A stretch of DNA of 64,000 nucleotides from Ruditapes philippinarum (taxonomy: Eukaryota): positions 1-64,000 of the forward strand of contig NW_026862559.1 in the NCBI RefSeq assembly GCF_026571515.1. Direction: 5' to 3'. Numbering within the stretch: the stretch's first letter is position 1; the number at the start of each line of letters is the position of its first letter. Under the pieces are notes generated by a model. It was not told the DNA's origin. It did not search any database and saw nothing but the letters and a program-made list of their open reading frames with translations. A program made the translations under genes and the position numbers. Below are positions 7,450 to 64,000 of this stretch, piece after piece.

Positions 7450-9270
7450 AATGACCCTGAACTTTACATATCTGGTTCTAAAATTCCAGTAGTTGATGAA
7501 GCTAAGTTTTAGGAATTATATTTGATAAAAAACTTTCTTTCATACCATATATTAAACATTTGAAAACTAAATGCCTAAAAGCTTTAAATTAACTAAGGGT
7601 TTTATCAAGTACAAATCGGGGATCAAATTCTTCCACATTATTGAAATTATACAGAAGTCTTATCCGATGAAAATTAGAGTATGGTTCTATAGTACATGTA
7701 TATGGATCTGCAAGAAAATAATATCTTCAAATGCTAGATACCATACATCACCAGGTTAAGGTGCTTTTCGCACCTCACCTGTAGAAAGTCTATATGCGGA
7801 AGCTGGGGAACCATCACTTCATCTTCGTCGAAAAAAGCTATCACTTCAATATACAACTAGAATTTCATGTAATAGCAAAAATCCAGCTAAAAATATTATT
7901 TTCAAAACAAGTTATACTGACAAATTTGAACCATTAGGCCTTCGTTTAAAAGTTTATTTAGATAAACTTAAAATTAATCCAGACAGTTTTGTTTGTTTGT
8001 TTGTTTCATTTTACGCCTTTTTCCAACAGTATTTCAGTCATATAGGCGGGTAGTTTCCTAACCATCGTTCCTGGAGAGTTACACCAGTACTAGACAACCT
8101 TCCTCCGCGCTAAACTACCAAAGCATCTCCCGGGGATCGAACCCACGCCAGAGAGGTACCTGGATTAGAAGTCATCGACTCTAACCCCTCGACCAAGGAG
8201 GCGGTAATCCAGACAGTATCCTTCAAAATGACTATGAAGATGTTCCACATTGGACTTATAATTTCCCAAAATTAAATATTAACCTTTCAAATATGAAAAA
8301 GTCATCAAAATCACCTGAACATTTCAAAGAGAAGTTTCTAGCAATTAAGGAAGAACATGAAGATTTTATACATATTTAGACGGTTCAAAAGAAGGTTGCA
8401 AGGTAGGTGCAGCTGTGTTTGAAAATAATTTTACATCTAGTATAAGATTACCAGATAATGCATCAATTTTTACTGCTGAAGCAAAAGCTATAGATTTAGC
8501 ATTGTCATACATAGAACAGCATACCCATGATAAATTTGTGATATTTTCTGACTCGCTTTCTGTTTTAATATCCATTAAAAATAAAAAATCTGACAATGTC
8601 ATGATAAAGAAACTTCTTTTACGATTTCATGATATACTTAAAACAAAATTGGATTCCAAGTCATGTAGGTATACGAGGAAATGAAAAAGTAGATGCTTTA
8701 GCTAAACAATCATTAAATTTTCAAAAAACTGACTTATTGTTGTTACCTGCTTGTGATTAAAGACCGGCTTTAAATAAACTCGTATCATCTGAATGGAAAG
8801 CAAATTGGGACAATGCCGTTTTTAATAAACTTTCTATATAAACCACTCTCTTGATGTGTCACCATCTCTATCTCTGGCAAACCGCCATGATCAAACAGTT
8901 CTTCTTCGATGCCAAATTGGACACACTAAAATTATCCACTCTTATCTCCTTACGAATGACAATGCCCCCTTCTGTATAGGTTGTAATAAACATTTTACTG
9001 TCAAGCATTTTCTTCTTGAATGTCATGATTTTTCACAGGCCCGTAATAGATTTTATTCTGTAAATTCACTCAAAAAACTCTTTAATACAATTCCATCAAA
9101 AAAATATCATTGATTATTTAAAAGAGATAAATTTGTATTCTAGGATCAAATTGGCTCATTTTTATTGTCATTTACAAGTTTTACATAACATTTTTAGCCT
9201 ATTATAATAGCATTCGGCACGATATGGCCAGTTATGTGTTGACGTGTCGTCCAAATACAAACAAACAAAA
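7450..9270 (+). mobile_element. 5'-truncated, degenerate I-group (I/Nimb/Ingi-like) LINE with RNase H
   Basis: Fragments GAFRTSPVESLYAEAGEPSLHLRRKKLSLQY (~7760-7855); RNase H ..YLDGSKEG..GAAV..SIFTAEAKAI..IFSDSLS (8370-8600); C-terminal CIGC..FTVKHFLLEC zinc motif; (CAAA)n tail near 9255-9270. Absent from copy B at ~25360. Confidence 0.85.
7988..8204 (-). mobile_element. tRNA-derived SINE (CORE-like centre) nested in the LINE
   Basis: Minus-strand A box TGGTCGAGGGG and B box GGTTCGATCC, (AAAC)n tail, and a perfect 13-bp TSD TAATCCAGACAGT at 7975-7987 and 8205-8217. Confidence 0.9.
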
Positions 9271-47000: not shown

Positions 47001-50000
47001 TACATTAAGATAAACTTGCAGGGAAATTTTCAAATCAATTACAATGTTTAAATTCCTAAACATTCTTGAAGCTTTTTAGAAAATTTGACTTTCTTGTTAT
47101 GGGTATAGAGCGTTGTAGGGTATTATGAAAATCAAACTGCAGGCCAAGTACTGAGACTTTGAGAAAAGTAAAAATATTCAAGATAAAAGTAATAATTTCC
47201 ATGTTATGTGTGATTTATGACTGATTTGCATTATTTTTCACCATACTTCTACCATGTTATTAACGCCGTAAGGGTTATTTTGACCTCTTTTTTTGTTAAT
47301 AACATAGGTTGTATGTGAAAATTGTTTTCTCTGTTCACTTCACTTAGTACATTTTCAAAATGTCATGAAAATTAGCATTTATCTGGAGACCTGCTGCTTT
47401 AAGGGGGGAGAAAAGTTACCTTGTTTTAAGTGGTGTAGTTCCCTTCCAGCAGTTGTTTTGTATTGTTAAATATATTAAACAGTATGATATAATTATATAT
47501 CAGATAAGACGTAGCGACAAAATTATGGTATAACACAGCAAGTCCACCCAATAAATCAAAGATTAACTGATTTCATTTTCAACTTCCTACAGTTTCCATT
47601 TTAGGTTGGGATTGAGAGTTGGCAGAGTTCCAACATATAGTTTTTGTTCCTTACTGTGAAATGATTTAATCGAAACTTTAGTCACGTAGAATTCTCCACT
47701 ATTCCCTTTGGTGGAGGGTTAATTGAACTTCTGCACTTTTTGGGGAGGTTTGGTTAAACAATCCCTTGTTAAAAATAGGGCATATCTTTTACACAAATTC
47801 AGCAGGGAAAGCAAATATAATATTATAATTATATTGTATATGTTTCAGATTGTATACGTATTTTGAGAAATTTCATGAAGTGTTACAAAAGAATGGTGAT
47901 ACTTTGCAAAGTTTACCAACTGACTTTATAGATCAGTTATTGGGGAAACTTGTTCCTGACAGTGGTGTCCTTAATGTTTCACAGATTCTTCTTTTATCAA
48001 AAGGTAATCAGATTTTAAACATCTATTTTAAAAATAAACAACAAAAAATGGGGTGGGAGAGTTAAATGTCTAAACATATAAGAATAACTCAAACATTTTT
48101 TCTTTCATTCTTTAATTTGCAAGACATAAAAAGGACTCCAATGAGGTTTTTTGACATTGCAGAACTGTAAATAATTTTTTGAGGTTAATGATCTATTTGA
48201 TTCAGGTTAAGCCCAATATTTTGTATGCACAATTTCAGATCATGCACTCATTCCATTTATCCGGAATAATTAGTCCAATTGTGAAAAATGACCCAAATTG
48301 AAAAATGATGCAATTGGACTAAGAATAGCACAAAAAAAAATTAATTTGTTTCTCAAGTATATTTCTCAATCTTTTTGTTTTAAGTGCCCGTGCTGACCTA
48401 TGTAAGAAAACTTAGATTTAATGTTTTAAGCTCTTGGACTTTAGTGAAGTTCCTGTAAGATTTTAAATATTATTTTCACATTCTATAAATGATATATTTT
48501 ACTCATGATTTTTCAGAATTTCCCTTTAACTTGTTAATTGACAGTATAACAAGTTATGTTTCAAGCATACATGATTTGCCAAGTTCTGATGTTGACAAGT
48601 TGTGTAGCACAGATGATACAACTTCCTCACAATCTCTGGTAATTAATGGTTATTTACATATATATCTTTATTTAACACATGTATAGAATTATTCTGGTTT
48701 TAGTTTTGATACTGTTTAACCCTTCTTTTTCTTCCAGAACTTTAATCAAAGTGTATTTATCATATAATCTTTAACCAAATCTAAAGTAAAATAAAGAAAA
48801 GTTTCTGAAGCATCAGATGATATAAAATCCTCAGACAAGCAGATTGAACTGTAAGTGTTACAGTTGTACCTGTATCGTTGCCATCATTTAGCTATCATTG
48901 TCGAAGAGTTTTTTTATTGTTGGTTTTTTAGATGGATTGAATCAAAGTAAAGGTAACAAAAGATGGTTTAATATATACTGTCCTTATCTAACAGACACAA
49001 TTTAATCAGTGTCATCAATTTCCTTTCATTAATTCTGTTTTCGTTTCGCTTTTAAGGATCTCCAATTTTTATGCCCCTTTTTATGAGGAGAGGTAATAGA
49101 TATGCCTTTGTTCATCTGTCTCTTCTCCCAGGGGGGGGGGGGGGTAATAGTTATGCCTTTGTTCATCTGTCTCTCGTCTCAGGAGGAGGGGAGGTAATAG
49201 ATATGCCTTTGTTCATCTGTCTCTCCTCTCACGAGGAGGGGAGGTAATAGATATGCCTTTGTTCATCTGTCTCTCATCGTAGGAGGCGAGCTAATAGATA
49301 TGCTCTTGTTCATCTGTCTTTCCCCTACGAGGAGGTGAGGTAATAGATATGCACTTGTTCATCTGTCTTTCCCCTAGGAGTAGGGGAGGTAATAGATATA
49401 CCTTTGTTTATCTGTCTTTCCCCTTAGGAGAAGGGGAGGTAATAAATATACCCTTGTTCATCTGTCTTTTCCCTAGGAGAAAAGGAGGTAATAAATATGC
49501 CCTTGTTAATCTTTTTTCCCTTAGGAGAAGCGGAGGTAATAAATATGTCCTTGTTCATCTGTCTTTTCCCCAGGAGAAAGACAGGTAATAAATATGCCAT
49601 TGTTCATCTGTATTTCCCCTAGGAGGAGGGAAGGTAATAGATATGCTTTGTTCATCTGCCATTTCCCTAGGAGGAGGGGAGTTAATAGATATGCCCCTGT
49701 TCATCTGTCTTTCCCCTTAATAGAAGGGTAAGTAATAAATATGGCCGTGTTCATTAGTCTTTCCCCTAGGAGCAGGGGAGGAAATAATATGCCCTTGTTC
49801 ATCTGTCTTTCCCCTAGGAGGAGGGGAGGTATTAGATATGCCTTTGTTCATCTGTCTTTCCCCTAGGAGGAGGGGAAGTAACAAATATGCCCTTGTGTAT
49901 TTGTCTTTCCCCTTAGAAAAAAGGGAGGTAATAGTTATTCCCTTGTTCATCTGTTTTTCCCCTTAGGAGAAGGGGAGGTAATAAATATGCCCTTGTTCAT

Positions 50001-53000
50001 CTGTTTTCCCCTAGGAGGAAGGGAGGTAATAGATATGCCTTTGTTCATGTGTCTTTCCCCTAGGGAGGGGAGGTAATAAATATGCCTTTTTTCATCTGTC
50101 TATCCCCTAGGAGGAGGGGAGGTAATATATATGCCTTTGTTCATCTGTCTTTCCCCTAGGAGGAAGGGAGGTAATATACGTGGGTTGTCCCAATATTATG
50201 TGACAAGATTGTTTAAAAGCTAGATAAAACAGGTACGAATTTGATATTTTAATATGTTATAAACCCATATAATTTAAACATTTTCACAAATTTTCAAAGA
50301 AAAATATCAACAAACAACAAAAATATGCCATAAACACCGTGGCAACTAACTGAATCGCGGCTCACGTCCAACGTCAAAAACGGCGTTAAATCTATATAAG
50401 GCGCCTTTCTCAAATACTCTTAATGGCTTTCAACGCAATAATGATACCCATAAATCGTCAATTTCTGACTTAAATCATGTGGTTGTTAATGTCTGTTGAC
50501 TGTTTTGATGGCATACATTAATTTTTTCTATACGCAAACTTCCGGTCTCGTTACACCTGTTTTTAGCTGTAGGAAATAGGTGACGAAGATCGGTCTTCCT
50601 ATCCGTGTTTTCCTTATTTTCGCTTTTTGTAGCGCAACGCTCTGGTTCCGTTTATGCCTTTTGTACACAAGTGCTCAGGATATGTTGCTAAACTGTTCTA
50701 TTTGGTATATTTGTTTAAAATTGTAATATGTGTCATCTCGAAATAGTCATGGAACCTGAGTGACATGTTCACTGTGCCGCGAATTCTTCGAACGTCGCCA
50801 TTTTAACTTTCCTATTTCCTATGAGAAGTGTTCATTTACTTGTTCGTTTCTTAAGTTTTTTAATTAAAATTTTCTGAGTTGATGTAAACATAGCAGCAGA
50901 GGATGTCAACGTGTCTGTCTTTTCCCTAGGAGGAGGGGAGGTAATATATATGCCTTTGTTCATCTGTCTTTCCCCTTGGAGAAGGGGAGGTAATACATAT
51001 GCCCTTGTCCATCTGTCTTTCTCCTGAGGAGAAGGGTAGGTAATAAATATGCCCTTGTTCATCTGTCTATCCCCTAGGAGCAGGGGAGGTAATAATATGC
51101 CCTTGTTCATCTGTCTTTCCCCTAGGAGGAGGTGAGGTCATAAATATGCCCTTGTGTATCTGTCTTTCCCCTTAGGAAAAGGGGAGGTTATAGATATGCC
51201 CTTGTTCATCTGTCTTTTCCCCAGAAGGAGGGGAGGCAATATATATGCCTTTGTTCCCTAGGAGAAGGGGAGGTAATAAATATGCCCTTATTCATCTGTC
51301 TTTCCCCTAGGAGGAGGGAGGTAATAGATATGCCCTTGTTCACCTGTCTTTCCCCTTGAAAGGGAGGTAAAAGATATGCTCTTGTTCTTCTGTCTCGCTT
51401 TCACCTAACCTGCTGTCACACTGACTGTCTGTTCACTGACAAAACAAAGACTTGTTTGGACCGCTGTGTCCTCTATGTGTCTAGACACATTTCTAGTTAC
51501 ATCTTTAATAATTTCTATTTTGATTATGTTTCCTTATTGAATCAAGCATTAGTTGGTACATTCTGACCAGGCATAAAGTGTTTGCATCTCAATTTTTCTC
51601 TTTACTGAACTTGTCACATGTGACCTTAATTCATAAACGGACTGTTCTAAATTTAAAGCTCGGCAAGTCGATTATATAAATTCAGTAAGGTAAGGGGTAA
51701 ACCAATGTTTACATTTCTTTATTTCATATATAGCCAGAAACATCAAAAAAGAAGAAGATGAAACATTTCAATTCAATATGGCAGAATATTGAACCTCTAT
51801 TATGCGGAAAAAATAACGCTGTCGTCACAGACAACATAAACAACAACACTCGTCAAAATAACAGTGAAGTCCCTCCACATCAGGGTAAGATTTGTATCTT
51901 TTATACCCCGGTTAGTTCACAATGTGATGTCTGTAGGAAAAAGGGAGATGAATGGCTTAGGTGTTAGATAACTGTTTTATTTGCCTTTCTATAACTAAAG
52001 CATGCAATTGTCATTGATTATGTAACTGTTGTCCAGGGGTTATTGTTGTTGTGGGTTTTAATTGTAGACCCCACATATATAGTATACTAGATAGTACAGA
52101 GTTCAAAAAGTACTATGTAATATATAAGTATGTAGGGGAAAAAATCTGAGATTCTTTTAGTATAACTGGGTATCAAAAATTAATTTTGGGTACCATAAAT
52201 CATCTTTTGATGTGTCCGGTATATCCATCATCGGAACCTACGATACACTTTCCGAATATATTTATTTAATACTAGTATAAGGTAAAGAGCCTGGGTTACC
52301 GAGGATGAGGTATATCAAGTATATTTCAAGGTACATGAGGGCCCACAAGTAGAAACTGGAACAACAATAACTCAAACAGCCTTAGTTAAATAGATTAAAT
52401 AACCAAAGATTACAACATCCATGTTTATATAACTTTAAGTTATAATTATAACTTTGTCTTATATAATATCAATAAATATAACACCAACATTTAAAATTTG
52501 TGACCAAATAACAAGCATATTTTACTTTCTGTTATTTTAGATATGGAGAGTTTTGAGAAGAAGATAGAAATATTGACGCATATCTTGTACAACAATCCCA
52601 AAATCCTCTTTGCTCCAAATAATACACTTGCCAACAAAATTATACAAAAGGTGAATTACATAAGCATATGAAAACATGTTACTTTCATGAATAAATAAAT
52701 AAGCAAATAAAGTTAACAAACAGGCAAAAATTACAGATGCATGCTTTGGATGTTTTCCTTTTTTGTTTTGAATAATGGCTCCAAACTGGCTGCCACTTTT
52801 GTCAATGGAGGTAAATATTGTAAAGATCTGAAACTTATAATCTATTATTTTAGGTGAATTCAAGCATGGCAATGTACAGTAATATAACATACTATGCTGA
52901 ACAGTGGCAGAAGATGTCTGGAAATATTAGTAAACAGATTTATATCTTAAAGGTAACTAGTGCTAAATGTACATTTTTACAAAATGATGAAGTTTTGTTT

Positions 53001-56000
53001 TGTTGCTTTACCCCTTTTTTAACATGTTAATAAATACAAAAAAGGGTTGTGACTGGTTGCTCTAAAGCAGTGCCCCATACATCATTTCAGTGTAAAGTTT
53101 TGCCCAATACTTTATCTCAGTGTTAAATGGTGTCCCTTGCCTCATCTCAGTATAAAATGTGCCATATCCTTCATCTCAGTGTAAAATGTTGCCCCAAACT
53201 TCATCTTAGTGTAAAGGTTGCCTGATACTTCAATCAAAATCTGCAATTTACGTCTATGTAGGTTTAATTGCTTTCATTTTCCAGAATTTATTTTAGCATT
53301 GTGCCAGTCCTGTGTGATTTAAATATTTTATTTGACCTCTTTTTAGGTCTTTTGTTCCTCACGGATATTGAAATATATCAAAAGTACATATATAGCATGG
53401 TTTTAGGCTTAAATAGAGACTGGTAAAAACATAGAGGAATATTCCTCCTTTCTTAACCCCAAATTAGACAATTTATTAGTCTGTAATAACTTGAAATTTA
53501 TACAATGTTAAAGACACCCATGTACTGGGAAAAATATTTCAGAGTGGAGACATTGCTGGAATGGATAAGGAGGAAATTTCGACATTGAGTCAAGTGTTCT
53601 CATTTCTGGACAACATTGCCTGCGCTTGGCTAAACCTGGTGAAAGATGTAGATATGAACTTCTTCACTGGCTTCAGTTCTGAGGATGAACTAGAATATTA
53701 TTTCTTAAACAGACAGTTCCAGGATAATGTCACCGTTGTGGCAGGTTTGTTGTTTATTTTTGTGTCGCCTTAAAAAGGGCGACATATAGGGGTTAGTTAG
53801 GAGTACCCTTAGGCTTGTCCTGAGCATAACTCAGCCATATTGACAACAAACTTTGTATGTATGCTTCTTTTAATGTCCAGAAGTGCAGTGCACTAGATTC
53901 TTACCTTGTGCACTCCATATATTTTAGTGATTGCCCTTTGTTAATTTTCATACTTTAATTTTGCCCAGGCCATTTCTTCTAAATCATAAAAGCTATGGAC
54001 TTGAAACTTCATACGATGATAGATTTCATTAAGAAACAGTGCAATGCACAAGAACTGGTACTCTCTACTTCATGATTTTTTACTTATTGTTCTTTGTTAA
54101 TTTTCAAAGTTTTTTTTCCAGGCCATTTCTCTTACACTTTAAAATCTATTGACTTGAAACGGCATAGGATGAAGGATCTTTTTGAGAAGAAGTGCAGTAC
54201 ACAAGAACTTGTAAACTGCACTTCATGATCTTTTAAATATTGCCCTTTGTTAGTTTTCATACTTTATAGGCTTGTAAAGAGCATAACTTGGTCACTATAA
54301 GTTTGATTGACTCCAAATTTGGTAGGCAAGCTTTTTTCCCCATTGACCTGAAGTGCAGAGCTTAAGAATCCATCACAGAGCCCTCCATTTGATCTGTCAG
54401 TGTATAATTGTTCCATGGTATTTTTATTATTGATGATATAACAGTTTTATTAATCCTGACATTAAATTGTTACAATCAGTTCAAATGCCACTAAAGTTAA
54501 AGGTACATGTACATTGCAAAAGTAGTGTTTATAAATAACCTACAAAATGCCTATGTGACAGCTATATTGTTGACAAGTCGATACATCCGACTCGAGTTAT
54601 AATGGAAACTTAAACTTTATAGATAAGCAAATTTTAAATGAATCATGAGTCAAGAACAATAACTCACTTTTGCGTAATTTTGAGCAATTTGCCCTTGCAA
54701 GTTTTCATACTCAATTTTGCTGAGTTAGAACTTAAATTTATTATTACTTTTGAAACTCCATAGATGGATAGATATTATTACAAAAATATAGTACACAAGA
54801 ATCGCAACTCTCTTTTGCATAATTTTGGATTAATAACCATTTGTATTTTTTTTCATTCTTTTTTTTACTGTGGCATAATTCAAAAGTTATAAGTTTAATG
54901 AAACTTTATTGGGGGATAATCTCATTAAGAAGTGAAAAAGAAATTTATTTTGTATAATGTTGGAGTTATTGCTCTTTGTTATTTTTCATACTTAATTAGT
55001 TTGTCTAGAGCATGTGATGTTATGTTTATAATACCTTATAAAGCAGTGTAATTTATTAATATTTTATATACATGTATATATTTTTATCATTAGTAACTGA
55101 TTTTTCTATTGTTATATTTCAGGGCTGGTTTTCGAGAACTTTAATGATCACGTGTACACACTGCCGTCACATGTCCGCTATAAGATCAGACAAAACGCAA
55201 CATTAAATCCGGAAACCAACAAAATTAGACCACCATTCTGGTACCCGAGCCCCGGTTCAAATAATTTACTCTACTATGACTTTGGTTTTGTGTGGATACA
55301 GGTAAAAAAGTTAAAATTATTTTCTGGCATTTCCTTCTGAATGCTAGATGATATCATACTTTAATACAAATTTACCTATATTCAAGAGCTTTCCTTTTAA
55401 CCTATTAAAATTTGTCCTTGACCTTTAAGAGTCCTTGACATTCAAGGTAAAGAACCTTTAAGGTTTTTTTTTCTAAATTCCGGACATTTCAACACCTTTT
55501 TCAACACATTTTTGTTGACAATAATTGAGACAGAGTAATACGTCTCTTAAAGGGACTCCACTGAGATTTTTGATGTGATGAGGCTGAAAATAGTTTTTCA
55601 AGATTAATTTTCCATTTGATGTAGGTCTAGACCAATAACTTTTTTGCAAAATTTCAGATCATTTTCTCATTCTGTTTTTCCAAAATAATTATTCTTAATG
55701 TGCAAAATGACCAAAATTAAAAAGTTATGTCATGTTTTCACTCACTAAGAATAGCACGAAAATAGGCTTTCAAATTAATTTCTTTATATAATTTTAATTA
55801 TATTTTAAATATATTTTCAGTTTGCCCAAGCTTTCTATATAAGAAATTCAAATTTTCTGGTTTTAGGTTTTTGAATCCAAGTTGAGTTCCTTTAAGGTTA
55901 CAATTCTAATACTGGAATCATTGTAATCATATTTATTACTTTACATCCATACAGGACCTGGTAGAGAGAGCAATTATTGAGATACAGGTTGGGAAGCCGG

Positions 56001-59000
56001 TAACCAGACCAGGAACTTTCCTACACAGAATGCCATATCCTTGTTGGCTGTGGGATGCGTGAGTTGTCTCCCTTGATACTCTGTTAACTATAAGAGTTCA
56101 ATATTTTGAAAATTAGACTGAAGCTACATTTATCAATTTGAAGGTTTCATTTTGTCTTAGACTTTCTAAAATGTTTTGGACTTTTCATGTACAACTCATT
56201 TTATAATAATAAAAACATTAATGTAGTAATTTATAAGTGATTTAGTAACAATTTGTAAAAAAAGTTATTGTTGCTATTATTAAGTTATGAAGACATTTAT
56301 TACTTCATCTCCATTGGTAAAGCTTTTTTGTGAAGGGTTTGTTATCTCCTAATATTAATTATGTAATTAAGGCACTTGTTACCTCCCCTTATAAAATTTG
56401 TTAACTTATTATGACAATAAATTTTTGTTTTCAGATTTATCTGGCTTATACAACATGTTATACCGCTATGTTGAATTTCAGATTTATCTGGCTAATACAA
56501 CATATTATACCACTATGTTTGATTTCAGATTTATCAGGCTAATACAACATATTATACCACTATGTTTGATTTCAGATTCATCTGGCTAATACAACATATT
56601 ATACCACTATGTTTGATTTCAGATTTATCTGGCTAATACAACATATTATACCACTATGTTTGATTTCAGATTCATCTGGCTAATACAACATATTATACCA
56701 CTATGTTTGATTTCAGATTTATCTGGCTAATACAACATATTATACCACTATGTTTGATTTCAGATTTATCTGGCTAATACAAGATATTATACCACTATGT
56801 TTGATTTCAGATTTATCTGGCTAATACAAGATATTATACCACTATGTTTGATTTCAGATTTATCTGGCTAATACAACATATTACACCACTATGTTTGATT
56901 TCAGATTCATCTGGCTAATACAACATATTATACCACTATGTTTGATTTCAGATTTATCTGGCTAATACAACATATTATACCACTATGTTTGATTTCAGAT
57001 TCATCTGGCTAATACAACATATTATACCACTATGTTTGATTTCAGATTTATCTGGCTAATACAACATATTATACCACTATGTTTGATTTCAGATTTATCT
57101 GGCTCATACAACATATTATACCACTATGTTTGATTTCTGATTCATCTGGCTAATACAACATATTATACCACCATGTTTGATTTCAGATTCATCTGGCTAA
57201 AACAACATATTATACCACTATGTTTGATTTCAGATTTATCTGGCTAATAGAAACATATTATACCACTATGTTTGATTTCAGATTTATCTGGCTAATACAA
57301 CATATTTTACCACTATGTTTGATTTCAGATTCATCTGGCTAATACAACATGTTATACCACTATGTTTGATTTCAGATTCATCTGGCTAATACAACATATT
57401 ATAATACCATGTTTGATTTCAGATTAATCTGGCTAATACAACATATTATACCACTATGATTGATTTCAGATGAATCTGGCTAATACAACATATTATACCA
57501 CTATGTTTGATTTCAGATTTATCTGGCTAATACAACATATTATACCACTATGTTTGATTTCAGATTTATCTGGCTAATACAACATATTATACCACTATGT
57601 TTGATTTCAGATTCATCTGGCTAATACAACATATTATACCACTATGTTTGATTTCAGATTCATCTGGCTAATACAACATATTATACCACTATGTTTGATT
57701 TCAGATTCATCTGGCTAATACAACATATTATACCACTATGTTTGATTTCAGATTTATCTGGCTAATACAACATATTATACCACTATGTTTGATTTCAGAT
57801 TCATCTGGCTAATACAACATATTATACCACTATGTTTGATTTCAGATTCATCTGGCTAATACAACATATTATACCACTATGTTTGATTTCAGATTTCATC
57901 TGGCTAATACAACATATTATACCACTATGTTTGATTTCAGATTCATCTGGCTAATACAACATATTATACCACTATGTTTGATTTCAGATTATCTGGCTAA
58001 TACAACATATTATACCACTATGTTTGATTTCAGATTCATCTGGCTAATACAACATATTATACCACTATGTTGATTTCAGATTCATCTGGCTAATACAACA
58101 TATTATACCACTATGTTTGATTTCAGATTTCATCTGGCTATTTCAGACAACATATTATACCACTATGTTTGATTTCAGATTCATCTGGCTAATACAACAT
58201 ATTATACCACTATGTTTGATTTCAGATTTATCTGGCTAATACAACATATTATACCACTATGTTTTGATTTCAGATTCATCTGGCTAATACAACATATTAT
58301 ACCACTATGTTTGATTTCAGATTTATCTGGCTAATACAACATATTATACCACTATGTTTGATTTCAGATTTATCTGGCTAATACAACATATTATACACCA
58401 TGTTTGATTTCAGATTTCATCTGGCTAATACAACATATTATACCACTATGTTTGATTTCAGATTCATCTGGCTAATACAACATATTATACCACTATGTTT
58501 GATTTCAGATATTATCTGGCTAATTCAACATATTATACCACTATGTTTGATTTCAGATTTCATTCTGGCTAATACAACATATTATACCATTATGTTTGAT
58601 TTCAGATTTATCTGTCTAATACTACATTTTATACCACTATGTTTGATTTCAGATTAATCTGTCTAATACAACATTTTATACCACTATGTTTGTTTTCAGA
58701 TTCATCTGGCTAATACAACATGTTATACCAATATGTTTAATTTCAGATATATCTGGCTAATACAACATATTTTACCACATGTTTGATTTCAGATTTATCT
58801 GGCTATACAACATATTATACCACTATGTTTGATTTCAGATTTATCTGGCTAATACAACATATTATACCACTATGTTTGATTTCAGATTCATCTGGCTAAT
58901 ACAACATATTATACCACTATGTTTGATTTCAGATTTATCTGGCTAATACAACATATTATACCACTATGTTTGATTTCAGATTCATCTGGCTAATACAACA

Positions 59001-61293
59001 TATTATACCACTATGTTTGATTTCAGACTTATCTGGCTAATACAACATATTATACCACTATGTTTAATTTCAGATTTATCTCGCTTATACAACATATTAT
59101 ACCACTATGTTTGATTTTAGATTCATCTGGCTCATACAACATATTATACCACTATGTTTAGTTTCAGATTTATCTGGCTAATACAACATATTATACCACT
59201 ATGTTTGATTTCAGATTTATCTGGCTAATACAACATATTATACCACTATGTTTGATTTCAGATTCATCTTGCTAATTCAACATGTTATACCACTATGTTT
59301 GATTTCAGATTTATCTGGCTTATACAACATATTATACCACTATGTTTGATTTCAGATTTATCTGGCTAATACAACATGCTATACCACCATGTTTGATTTT
59401 AGATTTATCTGGCTAATAAAACATATTATACCACTATGTTTGATTTAAGATTCATTTGGCTAATACAGCATATTATATACCACTATGTTTGATTTCAGAT
59501 TTATCTGGCTTATACAACATATAATACCACTATGTTTGATGTTGTCATGGGTTTATTCAGTAGCTATGCTCGTACAGAAAATTGTCTATGAAAAGGAGAA
59601 GAGATTAAAAGAGGTTTGAAATACTTGTAAATTTTTGTTATCTTATTTTACCTCTTTAATATTTTGCCTTTTTTGTTTTGTTTTCAAATGACTTGTTGGC
59701 ACTCCTGATATTGCATGTTAATATCCCTTAAAATGGTTATTAAGTATTTTTTGCTTTTCTTTGGTTTCCATAAAATATTTTACAAGCATTTATGAACGTA
59801 TAATGATTATAGTATTCTTGTTTATTAAAAATGTTATACTGAAGCAGCATATTCTAAAAACTGAACTTGCTTTTTATGTGTGATATATGTGGTCAACAAT
59901 GAGCGATATAGGATGAATGATATATGATAAACGATATAGGTTATATTTCACTCATTAGTTATGTATCCCACTATTATAATATAAGATTTATTCATACAGG
60001 TAATGAAGATGATGGGCTTATCAGACAGTGTACACTGGTGGGCGTGGTTTATAACTGCCGCGGTACAGATGACTGTTACCGTGGTAACGCTGACGTTAAT
60101 GTTATATTATGGACGTGTACTATCTCATAGTAATCCAGTCATAGTGTTTATGTTCCTGGAAATGTTTGCCCTGTCTTCTATTGCCTTTTCGTAAGTATAT
60201 CAGTTAAAGGAACTAAGACTGAGGTCGAAAAGCCATGAAATTTAAAAATCATACATAGAATAAACAGAAACATATGAAAAAACATAAAAAAATGTACTTG
60301 TAATTCAATTGAAGATCATTATATGGTGTCATTGAAGCCCAAATTGAGTTAAAAACATCTAATTTGTTCTTGTTTTTCTATTGTATTTCAGGTTTTTGAT
60401 TAGCAGTATGTTCTCGCGAGCTAAACTTGCTGCAGCATGTGCGGGTATATTTTACTTTATAACATACGTACCATACATGTATATAGCCATCAGAGAGGAT
60501 TTAACGGGGACCAGGATACCAGCATACATTAAAACTATTGCTGTAAGTAACTGACATCTATACATGTTGGCCCTTACCCTGCCATAACCAAGTAGCACGC
60601 CTTTGACATTATTATAGGGTCAGGCCAGCCTTTATATTCTTGCTAGAAACTTGTAGAATTAAGTTGATTAAAAGAGTAAAAACTGTTGGAGGCAATAATT
60701 AGTCCTTGTTTCCTTAAGCAAGAAATTTTACACACATTTACACTCAGTACTGATTGGTTTCAGGAACAGATTTGCAAGTATGTCTATTATACGCTTATAG
60801 ATTCATACACAATCAAAGTTAAGTAAATTCTGAGTAAAGCAAAATAGTAAGTCACTATAATGTTTCTAATTCACAGAAGGCAATAAAACCAAAATATGGT
60901 TCAGTTGTGAAATGGCCGATAAACTGTCTATAAACTACAACAGAACACCAAAACTAAAATGCTTTGTGAAATAAAAATAATAACATTTCTGAGGGATATT
61001 TTGTCTTAAAAATAGGAAAATTGAAATTAATGAAACAGAATACATTGTATTTTTTATATAATCTCAGTAATAAAAACTTATTTTTCAGGCAATATTTCCA
61101 ACATCAGCTCTGGGTCTAGGTGGGAAGTATTTCCTGTTTTATGAGTTAGAGGGTTCAGGTGTACAGTGGGAGAACCTACATGTGTCACCACGGGAATATG
61201 ATAATTTTAGTCTACAGATTGTGTTGATAATGATAGCAGTAGACACTGTTTTTTACTTTATACTGGCCTGGTATATAGAGAATGTAAATCCAG
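44021..61293 (+). CDS. ABCA2: ABC transporter subfamily A, ABCA2-like; 5' part (TM1, ECD1, TMD1); gene continues past the window
   Basis: Phase-compatible exons: 44021-44050 (tentative start), 44376-44456 ([13 protein letters not shown]), 45569-45662, 46556-46655 ([15 protein letters not shown]), 47849-48003, 48517-48638, 51734-51884, 52541-52650 (NPKILFAP), 52854-52952, 53543-53744 (DNIACAW...QDNVTV), 55123-55301 ([15 protein letters not shown]), 55955-56058 (MPYPC), 59499-59613 ([11 protein letters not shown]), 60000-60190, 60392-60542 (SRAKLAAAC), 61089-61293 ([13 protein letters not shown]). The NPKIL.AP, DN.AC.W and QDNVTV motifs recall ABCA2. Orthology is untested. Confidence 0.88.
48130..48460. 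mobile_element. Degenerate copy of the Kolobok-like MITE
   Basis: Shares aaggactcca..gag, aatttcagatcat, aaaatgacc.aaatt.aaaa, ctaagaatagcac and the gttcct.taag end with 55551-55891. Confidence 0.6.
49085..51395. repeat. ~49-bp minisatellite (~30 copies) split by an insertion at ~50179-50911
   Basis: Unit gaggaggggaggtaatagatatgcccttgttcatctgtctttcccctag. Confidence 0.92.
50179..50911. mobile_element. Probable truncated DNA-transposon fragment inserted at TA within the minisatellite
   Basis: Non-repeat sequence starting TA|CGTGGGTTGTCC interrupts the array. No matching right TIR was found. Confidence 0.4.
53758..55010 (+). mobile_element. HINE/DINE-like element(s), degenerate
   Basis: ttttgtgtcgccttaaaaagggcgacatatagg terminal hairpin followed by ~140-bp degenerate repeats (acaagaact..taactct..ttgccctttgttaattttcatac). 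Confidence 0.6.
55551..55891. mobile_element. Kolobok-like MITE
   Basis: TTAA on both sides, with imperfect TIRs AGGGACTCCACT / AGTTGAGTTCCT. Confidence 0.65.
56435..59540 (+). repeat. 47-bp tandem array (~65 copies) made of the first 41 nt of an ABCA exon plus the splice acceptor; the last copy is the functional exon start
   Basis: Unit ATTTATCTGGCTAATACAACATATTATACCACTATGTTTGATTTCAG translates [13 protein letters not shown], identical to the start of exon 59499-59613. Confidence 0.95.
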
Positions 61294-61629
61294 GTAAAAT
61301 TAGAACTTAGTCTTTTATTCTTTTTAGAACTGGTATATGTAATTAACCGTTCTTCTTGCAAATTATCCTGGATTTTCTAGTTTTTGCATGGAAAATGCCA
61401 TCAACTTACGTTCATCCTATATATCAAATGAGTCACATTCTTTAGATATAATTTCCATTATGCCAGGAATAATGGCATACCAAAGCATTATTTCAGAAAC
61501 ATTATAATAACTGTCTACCATAGCCATGGTATTGTTTCATTATTTAATGAACTTCCAGTATACAAAAGCCAATACAAGACCCATATTATTTTCTTTGTAC
61601 ATGTACATCAAACCATATAGTGATTTCCA

Positions 61630-61940
61630 TTATATCAGGAACTAATATGGTATATTTGGGCCATGGCATTTTTCATTATTTCAGAATGTTATGGTATATT
61701 TAGGTCATGGCAGTTTTTTTTATTATTTCAGAATCTTATAGTATATTTATGCTATGGCATTTTTTATTATTTCAGAATCTTATGGTACATTTAGGCCATG
61801 GCTTTTTTTATTATTTTAAAATCTTACGGTATATTTAGGCCATGACTTTTTTCGTTATTTCAGAATCTTATGGTATATTTAGGCCATGGCATTTTTCATT
61901 ATTTCAAAATCTTATGGTATATTTAGGCCATTGCACTTTT
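61630..61940 (+). repeat. ~44-bp tandem array (~7 copies) derived from the acceptor/start of the next ABCA exon
   Basis: Unit AATCTTATGGTATATTTAGGCCATGGCATTTTTCATTATTTCAG reads SYGIFRPWHF in the phase left by the preceding exon, matching the ABCA motif PG.YG.PRPWYF. Confidence 0.8.
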
Positions 61941-64000
61941 TATTAGCTCACCAGAGCCGAAGGCTCAGGGTGAGCTGTTATTATCAAAGAGGGATGCTCC
62001 GGCGTCCATCGTCCGTCGTCATGCGTCAACAATCATCTTCTTCTCTGAAACTACTAAGCCAATTTACTTCAAATTTGGTCTGTAGCATCCTTGTGACAGT
62101 CACACTTGTATTTGCTCATATTATTCCAGTTGGCCGCTGTTAGGGGTCAGCAGAGCTAAAAATAGAAAAACCTTTAAACATCTTCTTCTACAGAACTAAT
62201 GGATGGATGATCACCAAACTTTGTCTGTAGCATTCTTGGGAAGTCTTTTATCAAGTTTGCTCATATTAATTTGATTGGCCCCTTTAAGGGGTCTCTTGGG
62301 CTAAAAATAGAAAAACCTTTAGACATCTTCTTCTACAGAACCAATGGATGGATGATCACCAAACTTTGTCTGTAGCATTCTTGGGTAGTCTTTTATCAAG
62401 TTTGCTCATATGAATTTGATTGGCACCTTTTAGGGGCCGCTAAAGCTAAAAATATAAAAACCTTTAAATGTCCATTTCTACAGAACTAATTGATGGATGA
62501 TCACCAAACTTTGTCTGTAGCATTCTTGGGTAGTGTTTAATCAAGTTTGCTCATATTAATTTGATTGGCCCCTTTTAGGGGCCGCTAAAGCTAAAAATAG
62601 AAATACCTTTATATGTATATTTTTAGAGAACTGATTGATGGATGATCACCAAACTTTGTCTGAAGCATTGTTGGGTAGTCTGTTATCAAGTTTGCTCATA
62701 TTATTTGATTGGCCCCTTTTAGGGGCCGCTTAAATTAAAAATAGATATACATTTAAACGTCTATTGCTACAGAATTAATTGATGGATGGTTACCAAACTT
62801 TGTCTGTAGCATTCTTTGGAAGTCTTTTATCAAGTTTGCTCATATTAATTTGATTGGCCTCTTTTAGGGGTCTCTAGGGCTAAAAATAGAAAAACATTTA
62901 AACATCTTCTCCTACAGAACCAATGGATAGATGATCACCAAACTTTGTCTGTAGCATTCTTGGGTAGTCTTTTATCAAGTTTGCTGATATTAATTTGATT
63001 GGCCTCTTTTAGGGGCGGCTAAAGCTAAAAATAGAAAAACCTTTAAATGTCTATTTCTACAGAACTAATTAATTGATGATCACCAAACTTTGTCTGTAGC
63101 ATTCTTGGGTAGTGTCTTATAAAGTTTGCTTATATTAATATGATTGGCCCCTTTTAGGGGCCGCTAAAGCTAAAAATAGAAATACCTTAAAATGTCTATT
63201 TCTAGAGAACTTATTGGTGGATGATCACTAAACTTTGTCTGTAGCATTCTTAGGTAGTCTTTTATCCAGTTTGCTAATATAATTTTGATTGGCCCCTTTT
63301 AGGGGTCTGTAGGGCTAAAAATAGAAAAACCTTTAAACATCTTCTCCTACAGAACTAATTGATGGATGATCACCAAACTTTGTCTGTAGCATTCTCGGGA
63401 TGTGTTTTATCAAATTTGCTCATATTAAATTCAAGTTTGCTCATATTAAATTGATTGGCCCGTTTTAGGGGCCGCAAAAGCTAAAAAATAGAAATACCTT
63501 TAAATGTCTATTTCTACACAACTAATTGATGGAAGATCACCAAATTTTTTTGTAGCATTCTTGGGTAGTCTTTTATCAAGTTTGCTCATATTAATATGAT
63601 AAGCCCCTTTAACGGGCCTTTATAACTAAAAATAGAAATACCTTTAAATGTCTATTTCTACAGAACTAATGGATGAATGATCACCAAACTTTGTCTGAAG
63701 CATTGTTGGGTAGTCTTTTATCAAGTTTGCTCATATTATTTGATTGGCCCCTTTTAGGGGCCGCTTAAATTAAAAATAGATATACATTTAAACGTCTATT
63801 GCTACAGAACTAATTGATGGATGGTTACCAAACTTTGTCTGTAGCATTCTTTGGTAGTCTTTTATTAATTTTGCTCATATTAATTTGATATGCCCCTTTT
63901 AGGGGCTGCTAAAATTAAAAATAGAAATACGTTTAAACATCTTCTCCTACAGAACTAATTAATGGATGATCACCAAACTTTGTCTGTAGCATTCTTGGGT
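61941..64000 (+). mobile_element. HINE/DINE-like element with an expanded ~145-bp internal satellite (~13 copies, runs off the window)
   Basis: ttagctcaccagagccgaaggctcagggtgagct hairpin, cgtccatcgtccgtcgtc microsatellite, then a tandem unit containing gatcaccaaactttgtctgtagcattcttggg. Confidence 0.85.

What the first reader, a model, noticed from the sequence alone, without database searches (positions are those of the whole stretch)
56420..59613. An ABCA exon preceded by ~65 tandem copies of its own splice acceptor and first 41 coding bases
Seen: the intron after exon 55955-56058 reaches a normal acceptor (aatttttgttttcag, ending 56434). The exon then starts, stops after 41 nt and restarts behind a new TTTCAG about 65 times over 3.06 kb. 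Only the last copy (59499) continues [12 protein letters not shown]...EKEKRLKE to a GT donor. The unit is 47 nt, so read-through shifts frame and meets stops. Inference: the spliceosome must skip ~65 near-identical YAG acceptors, including the ancestral one with the better pyrimidine tract. The acceptor now in use takes its upstream signals from former coding sequence (ACTATGTTTGATTTCAG). This is intron growth by exon-start amplification. It is a natural test of exon definition and could act as a copy-number-dependent NMD or splicing rheostat.
Basis: partly seen in the sequence, partly recalled or inferred. Interest (0 to 1): 0.88.

Follow-up and report, generated by a model that had tools for sequence, protein, structure and literature searches.

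The report
Splice-acceptor mirage minisatellite in ABCA gene
An intron of an apparently intact clam ABCA transporter gene ends in 65 tandem copies of its own splice acceptor plus the first 41 bases of the next exon; this is an unusually large example of the 'mirage' minisatellites already known from amphioxus, and nothing yet shows that it regulates anything.

Summary
A 47-nt unit (TTTCAG plus the first 41 nt of the exon) is repeated 66.1 times at 56424-59540. Only the last copy continues into the conserved exon.

The gene looks intact. About 42 exon-sized pieces on the 298-kb contig align end to end with a 2095-aa ABCA2-like protein of Mercenaria.

At least 15 decayed pseudogene copies elsewhere in the genome keep this junction single-copy. 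They show the ancestral state: a 9-nt direct repeat (ATGTTTGAT) at the intron end and again 47 nt later in the exon. This fits origin by slippage and growth by unequal exchange.

The same gene has an older 44-nt array before a later exon. The pseudogenes have a 76-nt array before the preceding exon.

This kind is known: amphioxus 'mirages' (PMC3087553, PMC3902484) and the human F7 intron 7 repeat (PMC1557585). The scan has noted such arrays before on other DNA of this genome (s1-793113, s1-808180).

Use of the last acceptor is inferred only. The proposed rheostat role is unsupported.

Verdict: a new member of a known kind, notable for its size and its traceable origin.

The parts
55955..56058 (+). 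Upstream exon ('B'): [34 protein letters not shown] plus GC of a split codon. The donor is tgc|GTGAGT at 56059.
   Evidence: It aligns to Mercenaria P0220 up to residue 468.
56059..56434 (+). The original 376-nt intron with its acceptor ttgttttCAG (56432-56434). This is now the first decoy acceptor.
   Evidence: The flank is 82-89% identical to the same intron in the paralog loci.
56435..59498 (+). 65 tandem units, mostly 47 nt, each made of the first 41 nt of the exon plus TTTCAG. They carry 60 CAG, 2 TAG and 1 AAG decoy acceptors; one site is lost (CTG). The last CAG (59496-59498) is the acceptor that gives the conserved protein.
59460..59464 (+). Branch-point-like CTAAT (A at 59463), 36 nt before the authentic acceptor. 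It is supplied by former exon sequence of unit 65. Most units have the same motif at -34.
   Evidence: motif scan. Its use as a branch point is inferred.
59499..59613 (+). Authentic exon ('C', 115 nt): (A)[38 protein letters not shown]. The donor is gag|GTTTGA at 59614.
   Evidence: It is 95% identical to Mercenaria P0220 residues 469-508.
60000..60190 (+). Next exon ('D'), [14 protein letters not shown]..., in frame with exon C.
61646..61945 (+). Second, older array in the same gene: 44 nt x 6.8 copies, 86% matches. The unit is ttattatttCAG plus the first 32 nt of the exon that encodes SYGIPKPWYF.
   Evidence: It is shared with the paralog loci.
61946..64000 (+). An insertion that carries a 145-nt satellite and splits the second array. 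It ends at about contig position 64335. One more decayed unit follows, and the true exon starts at contig 64394 (L040:394).

Best explanation
This is a 'mirage'-type minisatellite: a tandem repeat whose unit spans an intron-exon boundary.

Origin. The ancestral junction had a 9-nt direct repeat (ATGTTTGAT), once just before TTCAG at the intron end and once 47 nt later inside the exon. Slippage or unequal exchange between these two copies duplicated the 47 nt that hold the acceptor and the exon start. Further unequal exchange expanded and homogenised the array to 65 extra units, lengthening the intron from 376 nt to about 3.44 kb.

Why it is tolerated. The exon-proximal copy stays joined to the rest of the 115-nt exon and its donor. 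Each unit brings its own branch-point-like CTAAT, a modest pyrimidine tract and an AG. The last unit can therefore serve the authentic acceptor, which is chosen through pairing with the nearby downstream donor (exon definition). Any use of an upstream decoy gives a frameshifted mRNA with an early stop, which nonsense-mediated decay would remove.

The array is most likely neutral or slightly costly, not a regulator.

What is shown and what is inferred. Shown: the anatomy, the uniqueness of the array, the ancestral state, the intact gene and the concerted-evolution pattern. Inferred: the slippage mechanism, use of the last acceptor, and NMD of mis-spliced forms.
For: Array anatomy.

Ancestral state. 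Fourteen single-copy paralog loci show ...aataaATGTTTGATTTCAG|ATTT...CT ATGTTTGAT gttgtc, with the two 9-mers 47 nt apart. None has more than one unit.

The gene is intact.
- Mercenaria ABCA2-like X1 (P0220, 2095 aa) aligns over residues 2-2095 to contig 44367-93838 in about 42 exon-sized pieces.
- The Walker and signature motifs are present, and there are no stops within the exon parts.
- All 15 paralog loci carry stops or frameshifts.

The junction is conserved without any insert. Mercenaria has PYPCWLWD|QFIWLIQHV, and an mRNA-contig protein of another bivalve (P0271) has PYPCWLWD|QFVWLIQHV.

Concerted evolution. Central units are 97.6-98.7% identical to the consensus, unit 1 is 89.4% and the last nine are 94.6%.

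Decoys give stop codons.

The same process has acted three times in this gene family.
- The 44-nt array before the SYGIPKPWYF exon is shared with the paralogs.
- The 76-nt array before exon B is present only in the pseudogenes. It lies between two similar ACTTT..ACAG motifs 74 nt apart.

Precedent. Amphioxus mirages in Adh3, globin, TnC and PGBD5 do not disturb splicing. In the human F7 IVS7 VNTR, the exon-proximal site of a row of identical 5' splice sites is used.
Against: - Expression and acceptor choice are therefore unverified.
- With a 376-nt first interval, intron definition or 'first come, first served' co-transcriptional splicing could favour the first decoy, so mis-splicing might be substantial.
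- The window's own first acceptor reads ATTTTTGTT, matching the 9-mer at only 7 of 9 positions. The microhomology is therefore inferred from the paralogs.
- The copy number rests on a single assembly.
Confidence: 0.75

Rival explanations
1. Regulatory array. The decoy acceptors divert part of the pre-mRNA into NMD substrates, so copy number sets the output of the transporter. Alternatively, the array sequesters U2AF or U2.
For: - Every unit is a complete module of branch point, tract and AG, and 63 unit-end decoys plus the ancestral acceptor keep an AG.
- The two decoys nearest the authentic site are the weakened ones (TAG at -96, AAG at -49). Only 4 of 64 decoy unit ends deviate from CAG. That both nearest decoys are among them has a chance of about 0.003 if the changes fell evenly. 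It is about 0.003-0.03 when the higher divergence of the array's edge is allowed for. This is a post hoc observation.
Against: - No expression data.
- The array is absent from all paralogs. Whether orthologues carry it could not be checked, because only their proteins were available and those show no insert at the junction.
- The pattern of a homogenised centre and diverged edges is that of neutral minisatellite turnover.
- Amphioxus mirages were reported not to affect splicing.
- Edge units mutate more anyway, which can explain the weakened nearest decoys.
Confidence: 0.08
2. Assembly artefact. The array is real but much shorter, or was over-expanded or mis-joined by a long-read assembler.
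For: 13 of 65 units have off-length variants, mostly single-base homopolymer changes typical of unpolished long reads. No second haplotype contig carries the array.
Against: - Units carry many distinct substitutions in a non-periodic order, which collapse or expansion artefacts do not create.
- The array sits inside a 298-kb contig, and both flanks are collinear with the paralogs and the orthologue.
- Assemblers tend to collapse such arrays rather than expand them.
Confidence: 0.08
3. A dead or silent gene. The window copy is just another pseudogene or is untranscribed, so no acceptor choice takes place.
For: The genome holds at least 15 decayed copies of this gene. No transcript of this species was found.
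Against: All of the roughly 42 exon pieces are open and collinear with a 2095-aa orthologue, with 88% amino-acid identity over exons A-F. Every paralog has stops or frameshifts within only six exons.
Confidence: 0.07
4. Junction-targeted amplification. This genome has a mechanism that preferentially duplicates splice junctions, rather than random minisatellite birth filtered by selection.
For: - One gene holds four junction-spanning repeats: 47 nt x 66, 44 nt x about 9, a 30-nt donor-side triplet and a 31-nt acceptor-side duplicate.
- A fifth lies in its pseudogenes.
- Other genes of this genome were noted by the scan.
- With the transposon-borne 145-156-nt satellites left out, about 1.1 such repeats are expected and 4 are seen (and a Poisson calculation by hand, P about 0.03).
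Against: - After removing the array that drew attention to this gene, 3 are seen against about 1.0 expected (P about 0.08).
- With all 29 arrays counted, 2.9 are expected.
- Tandem arrays make up 27.5% of the gene span, so hits on junctions are expected.
- All three large arrays have short direct repeats at their borders, as ordinary slippage predicts.
Confidence: 0.1

Closest known systems
'Mirage' minisatellites of amphioxus: Adh3 (Canestro et al. 2002, Nucleic Acids Res, PMID 12087171, cited in PMC3902484), globins BflGb6 and BflGb9 (PMC3087553), troponin C, PGBD5 (PMC3902484)
   Same: - Tandem repeats whose unit spans an exon-intron boundary and carries the splice signal.
- BflGb6 is the same acceptor-side type (3' end of the intron plus 5' part of the exon).
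- The units show concerted evolution, with the cluster borders left out of homogenisation.
- The authentic copy stays in use.
   Different: - A different phylum: a heterodont bivalve rather than a cephalochordate.
- Far more copies: 66 against the 3-6 repeat units given for globin BflGb6 (the copy numbers of the other amphioxus cases were not read here).
- A 47-nt unit, within the 10-72 bp range of Adh3.
- The founding microhomology can be read from pseudogene outgroups.
- Splicing was not tested here, whereas the amphioxus cases have RT-PCR data.
Human F7 intron 7 37-bp VNTR, whose first unit spans the exon 7 donor (Borensztajn et al. 2006, PMC1557585)
   Same: A minisatellite that places a row of identical splice sites next to the authentic one. 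The pseudo-sites are functional but silent, and the exon-proximal site is chosen.
   Different: The F7 repeat is on the donor (5') side and has only a few copies. Its mechanism (5'-to-3' scanning) was shown by experiment. The array here is on the acceptor side, where the authentic site is the last one transcribed, not the first.
Intron gain or intron sliding by tandem duplication (Rogers model; Drosophila cases PMC2891723; potato RdRp PMC4974935)
   Same: A tandem duplication that includes splice signals changes intron structure while the protein stays unchanged.
   Different: No new intron is created here. An existing intron is lengthened ninefold, and the duplication has grown into a long array.
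NAGNAG and other tandem acceptors (established knowledge)
   Same: Several AG acceptors compete at a single exon start.
   Different: Those sites lie 3 nt apart and give in-frame isoforms. Here they lie 47 nt apart and almost all give premature stops.

Membership tests
Mirage minisatellite (junction-spanning tandem repeat) | Head-to-tail tandem repeat with a minisatellite-sized unit (10-160 bp in the described cases) | tested here: met
   47-nt period, 66.1 copies, 94% matches.
Mirage minisatellite (junction-spanning tandem repeat) | The unit spans an exon-intron boundary and contains the splice signal | tested here: met
   The unit is TTTCAG plus the first 41 nt of the exon. Of the 65 unit ends, 61 are CAG, 2 TAG and 1 AAG. 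The exon's identity is fixed by alignment to orthologous ABCA proteins.
Mirage minisatellite (junction-spanning tandem repeat) | One terminal copy is continuous with the rest of the exon, and the gene stays intact | tested here: met
   The last copy runs into the 115-nt exon. The whole gene is collinear with the 2095-aa P0220.
Mirage minisatellite (junction-spanning tandem repeat) | Concerted evolution inside the array, with the border units left out of homogenisation | tested here: met
   Identity to the consensus is 97.6-98.7% in central blocks, 89.4% for unit 1 and 94.6% for the last nine units.
Mirage minisatellite (junction-spanning tandem repeat) | Regular splicing is not disturbed (the authentic site is used) | not testable with these tools
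This feature is only inferred from the intact gene and the conserved junction.
Mirage minisatellite (junction-spanning tandem repeat) | Length polymorphism or instability between haplotypes and individuals | not tested
   There is only one assembly and no second haplotype contig for this locus. Indirect hint: the related 76-nt array varies from 2 to 12 copies among the paralog loci.
ABCA full transporter (ABCA2-like clade) | Two halves, each with a transmembrane domain and a nucleotide-binding domain carrying Walker A, signature and Walker B motifs, collinear with known ABCA proteins | tested here: met
   tblastn of P0220, P0021 and P0022 finds GHNGAGKTT, LSGGMQRKLS and ILDEPTAGVD in the first half, and GVNGAGKTT, LSGGNKRKLS and DEPTSGMD in the second. 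It is not the strict ABCA2 orthologue: identity to mollusc ABCA2 is about 57-61%, against 88% to the Mercenaria 'ABCA2-like X1' clade.

The most novel reading that the evidence does not exclude
Splice junctions in this bivalve genome are preferred sites of tandem amplification, or the arrays are kept because they tune mRNA output through decoy splicing and NMD. On this reading, the 66-copy ABCA array with its weakened nearest decoys is a selected state rather than neutral minisatellite turnover.
Probability: 0.1. Interest if true: 0.7.

Novelty: new member of a known kind. Interest (0 to 1): 0.4.

Why it matters
If the gene is expressed, the spliceosome must pick the last of about 65 near-identical acceptor modules spread over 3.1 kb, although the decoys are transcribed first. 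This is the acceptor-side mirror of the human F7 VNTR that was used to show 5' splice-site scanning. It is a much harsher test than the 3-6-copy amphioxus mirages.

It also shows, with pseudogene copies as outgroups, how an intron can grow ninefold from a 9-nt microhomology. It shows that junction-spanning duplications are tolerated repeatedly in one gene family.

In kind, however, it is already described, and no function is shown.

Tried and rejected
RNA evidence:
The orthologous introns behind P0151 and P0152 could not be fetched.

Transcript evidence through proteins:
- A search with the exon-C reading frame found only two genomic exon fragments of other species.
- Two region searches with P0021 and P0220 found orthologues and an mRNA-contig protein of another bivalve (P0271). 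The species of this window was not among them.

Hypotheses rejected:
- The unit as a dispersed satellite or transposon cargo. The roughly 56-nt matches elsewhere are single copies inside collinear multi-exon paralogs.
- The window copy as a pseudogene: unlikely.
- Features on the other strand: no minus-strand ORF of 50 aa or more, and no Rfam match in 55000-62200.

Other:
- The original mirage paper (PMC117041) is not held.
Exons were searched by reference, one at a time. The joined reading was made only inside scripts, to count stop codons.
- The enrichment test for junction-spanning repeats was inconclusive.
Full report
OBSERVATION

- Tandem Repeats Finder reports one array at 56424-59540, with period 47, 66.1 copies, 94% matches and score 5464.
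- Cutting the array unit by unit gives 65 units between 56435 and 59498. Of these, 52 are exactly 47 nt.
- Each unit is the first 41 nt of the exon (ATTTATCTGGCTAATACAACATATTATACCACTATGTTTGA) followed by TTTCAG.
- The intron that leaves exon 55955-56058 (donor tgc|GTGAGT) reaches its original acceptor ttgttttCAG at 56434.
- The only copy that runs on into the coding sequence starts at 59499. It reads (A)[38 protein letters not shown] up to gag|GTTTGA at 59614.
- The next exon starts at 60000 in frame (VMKMMGLSD...).
- Unit ends are 61 CAG, 2 TAG, 1 AAG and 1 CTG. The 65th CAG is the authentic acceptor.
- Counting every AG in 56401-59498, there are 71 upstream of the authentic one, 68 of them YAG.
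- Joining the upstream exon to any of these, done inside a script only, gives an in-frame stop, most often after 20 codons (37 sites). The single exception is CAG 59466-59468, which would add 30 nt in frame.
- The minus strand holds no ORF of 50 aa or more, and Rfam finds nothing.

THE GENE
- Six-frame reading and tblastn with ABCA proteins from the protein searches place exons on the + strand from about 44.4 kb onward.
- The window is the first 64 kb of a 298-kb contig.
- The closest named protein is Mercenaria mercenaria 'ABCA2-like isoform X1' (P0220, 2095 aa).
- It aligns over residues 2-2095 to contig positions 44367-93838, in about 42 exon-sized pieces. Both nucleotide-binding domains are intact and there are no stops within the exon parts.
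- Identity over six exons is 88%, against about 57-61% to true mollusc ABCA2. The organism is therefore a heterodont bivalve related to, but not the same as, Mercenaria. The gene belongs to a bivalve ABCA2-like side clade.
- The junction in question is conserved without any insert. Mercenaria has ...PYPCWLWD|QFIWLIQHV..., and a 2102-aa protein from a 6.6-kb (mRNA-sized) contig of another bivalve has ...PYPCWLWD|QFVWLIQHV....
- The conserved protein can therefore only be made from the last acceptor.

PARALOGS AS OUTGROUPS
- A search of the whole assembly with array sequence found multi-copy matches only at this locus. It also found single matches of about 56 nt on many other contigs.
- These are not satellite or transposon copies. 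They are collinear, intron-containing copies of several exons of the same gene, 82-92% identical at the DNA level.
- All 15 loci examined carry stop codons or frameshifts in the six exons tested, so they are pseudogenes. Some may be allelic pairs.
- They keep the junction in its single-copy state...gacaataaATGTTTGATTTCAG|ATTTATCTGG...CCGCT ATGTTTGAT gttgtc.
- The intron therefore ended in ATGTTTGAT-TTCAG, and the same 9-mer recurred in the exon exactly 47 nt downstream. The match is 9 of 9 in several loci and 8 of 9 in others.
- A direct repeat bracketing the later unit is the classic substrate for slipped-strand or unequal-exchange duplication.
The 14 nt in front of the acceptor in use are the same as the ancestral intron end. 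Only the sequence further upstream comes from former coding sequence, including a branch-point-like CTAAT at -36.
- The ancestral and unit acceptors have the same pyrimidine count at -20..-4, 11 of 17.

ARRAY DYNAMICS
- Units are on average 96.7% identical to the consensus. Thirteen are exact, and 16 are the exact T4C variant.
- Central blocks are 97.6-98.7% identical to the consensus, unit 1 is 89.4% and the last nine are 94.6%.
- This pattern of a homogenised centre and diverged borders was also described for the amphioxus globin mirage. It points to ongoing unequal exchange.
- None of the paralogs has the array. It therefore arose in the intact gene after those copies split off.

THE SAME THING HAS HAPPENED REPEATEDLY
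1. At 61646-61945 the same gene has a 44-nt x 6.8 array (86% matches) made of ttattatttCAG plus the first 32 nt of the exon that encodes SYGIPKPWYF.
   - An insertion carrying a 145-nt satellite splits this array. One more decayed unit and the true exon follow at contig 64336-64394.
   - This confirms the scan note s1-804328 and locates the 'missing' true exon.
   - The paralogs share this array, with up to about 16 copies, so it predates their origin.
2. Most pseudogenes carry 2-12 copies of a 76-nt unit made of the acceptor plus the first 65 nt or so of exon B. The intact gene lacks it.
   - In the intact gene the corresponding positions hold two similar motifs, ACTTTACATCCATACAG and ACTTTCCTACACAG, 74 nt apart.
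3. Two small junction-spanning repeats lie further along the gene: a 30-nt donor-side triplet at contig 84660-84740 and a 31-nt acceptor-side duplicate at 88035-88096.

Is this more than chance?
- Tandem arrays make up 27.5% of the gene's 49.5 kb, in 29 arrays.
- If founder duplications fell at random, 2.9 would span a junction. The figure is about 1.1 if the transposon-borne 145-156-nt satellites are left out. Four are seen.
- After removing the array that drew attention to this gene, 3 are seen against about 1.0 expected (Poisson P about 0.08, calculated by hand).
- The test is inconclusive. A very high birth rate of minisatellites, plus tolerance of junction-spanning ones, is enough to explain the pattern.

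HOW IT MOST LIKELY WORKS
- Shown: the anatomy, the ancestral microhomology, the intact gene and the concerted evolution.
- Inferred: every unit is a self-contained 3' module, with CTAAT at -34, a modest pyrimidine tract and CAG.
- The last unit serves the authentic acceptor, and its branch-point A would be at 59463.
- The extra CAG at 59466-59468 lies only 5 nt after that A. By established knowledge of AG selection, that is too close to be used.
- The authentic site is the only one with a real donor within exon-definition range, 115 nt downstream. The GT inside each unit (tat|GTTTGA) lies only 35 nt from its acceptor and has a poor exonic context.
- Decoy use would give stop-containing mRNAs that are open to NMD.
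- The two decoys nearest the authentic site are the weakened ones (TAG at -96, AAG at -49). This could reflect selection, or simply the faster decay of border units.

COMPARISON WITH WHAT IS KNOWN
I checked it in the literature.
- Ebner et al. [quoted passage not shown] They state that the term 'mirage' was coined for Adh3.
- In those globins, BflGb6 has 3-6 units of the 3' intron end plus the 5' part of the exon. The authors add that RT-PCR suggests no interference with splicing.
- Pavelitz et al. 2013 (PMC3902484) add PGBD5 and cite troponin C.
- The human F7 IVS7 VNTR is the donor-side counterpart. It was used to show that the exon-proximal site of identical 5' sites is chosen (PMC1557585).
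- In the open-access library, 'mirages' in this sense appear only for amphioxus. I found no description in molluscs.
- The present case meets the four structural criteria of a mirage. The criterion of undisturbed splicing could not be tested with these tools, and length polymorphism was not tested.

LIMITS
- Copy number rests on one assembly. Thirteen off-length units, mostly homopolymer changes, may be sequencing error.

VERDICT
This is a real and striking but ordinary-in-kind structure: a very large acceptor-side mirage minisatellite in an apparently functional ABCA gene of a bivalve. Its origin is traceable. The proposed regulatory role is unsupported.

Noticed in passing
L011-L039 (e.g. 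G000:C7353:16500-23600, C8169:12200-15500, C6040:79100-85800): At least 15 intron-containing pseudogene copies of this ABCA gene, 82-92% identical in DNA, all with stops or frameshifts. Most carry 2-12 tandem copies of a 76-nt unit made of the acceptor plus the first 65 nt or so of the exon that lies at window 55955-56058.
   Followed up: partly
window 49085-50176 and 50914-51395: An intronic 49-nt minisatellite (about 22 plus about 10 copies), found only at this locus in the genome. Its unit reads like an acceptor, an 11-nt mini-exon and a donor (TTTCCCCTAG|GAGAAGGGGAG|GTAATA). No exon of the orthologue is missing here. Its origin is unclear.
   Followed up: partly
L042:660-740 (contig C11046 84660-84740): A donor-side mini-repeat of 30 nt x about 3, spanning the last 10 nt or so of an exon (..LFLLYG) and its GTATG donor. 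The third copy keeps a GT.
   Followed up: no
L042:4035-4096 (contig C11046 88035-88096): An acceptor-side 31-nt duplication (1.9 copies) spanning the start of the exon that begins GATAAAGGAGAATATTTC.
   Followed up: no
window 59466-59468: An A-to-G change in the last unit makes an extra CAG 30 nt before the authentic acceptor. It is the only upstream AG whose use would stay in frame without a stop, adding 10 residues. It lies 5 nt after the branch-point-like CTAAT, so it is probably skipped.
   Followed up: partly
window 61946-64000 and L040:1-335: An insertion of about 2.4 kb carrying a 145-nt satellite (about 14 copies), with hairpin-like ends (gctcaccagagccgaaggctcagggtgagc ... ggtgagcgactcagggcc). 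It sits inside the older 44-nt array. Similar 145-156-nt satellites recur in other introns of the gene and next to the paralogs.
   Followed up: no
window 7570-9110: Open reading frames that look like a non-LTR retrotransposon, including an RNase H-like stretch (DGSKEGCKVGAAV...). They lie upstream of the ABCA gene.
   Followed up: no
window 56435-59498: 13 of 65 units differ in length (46, 48, 49 or 52 nt), mostly by one base in a T run. This may be real slippage or unpolished long-read error.
   Followed up: no
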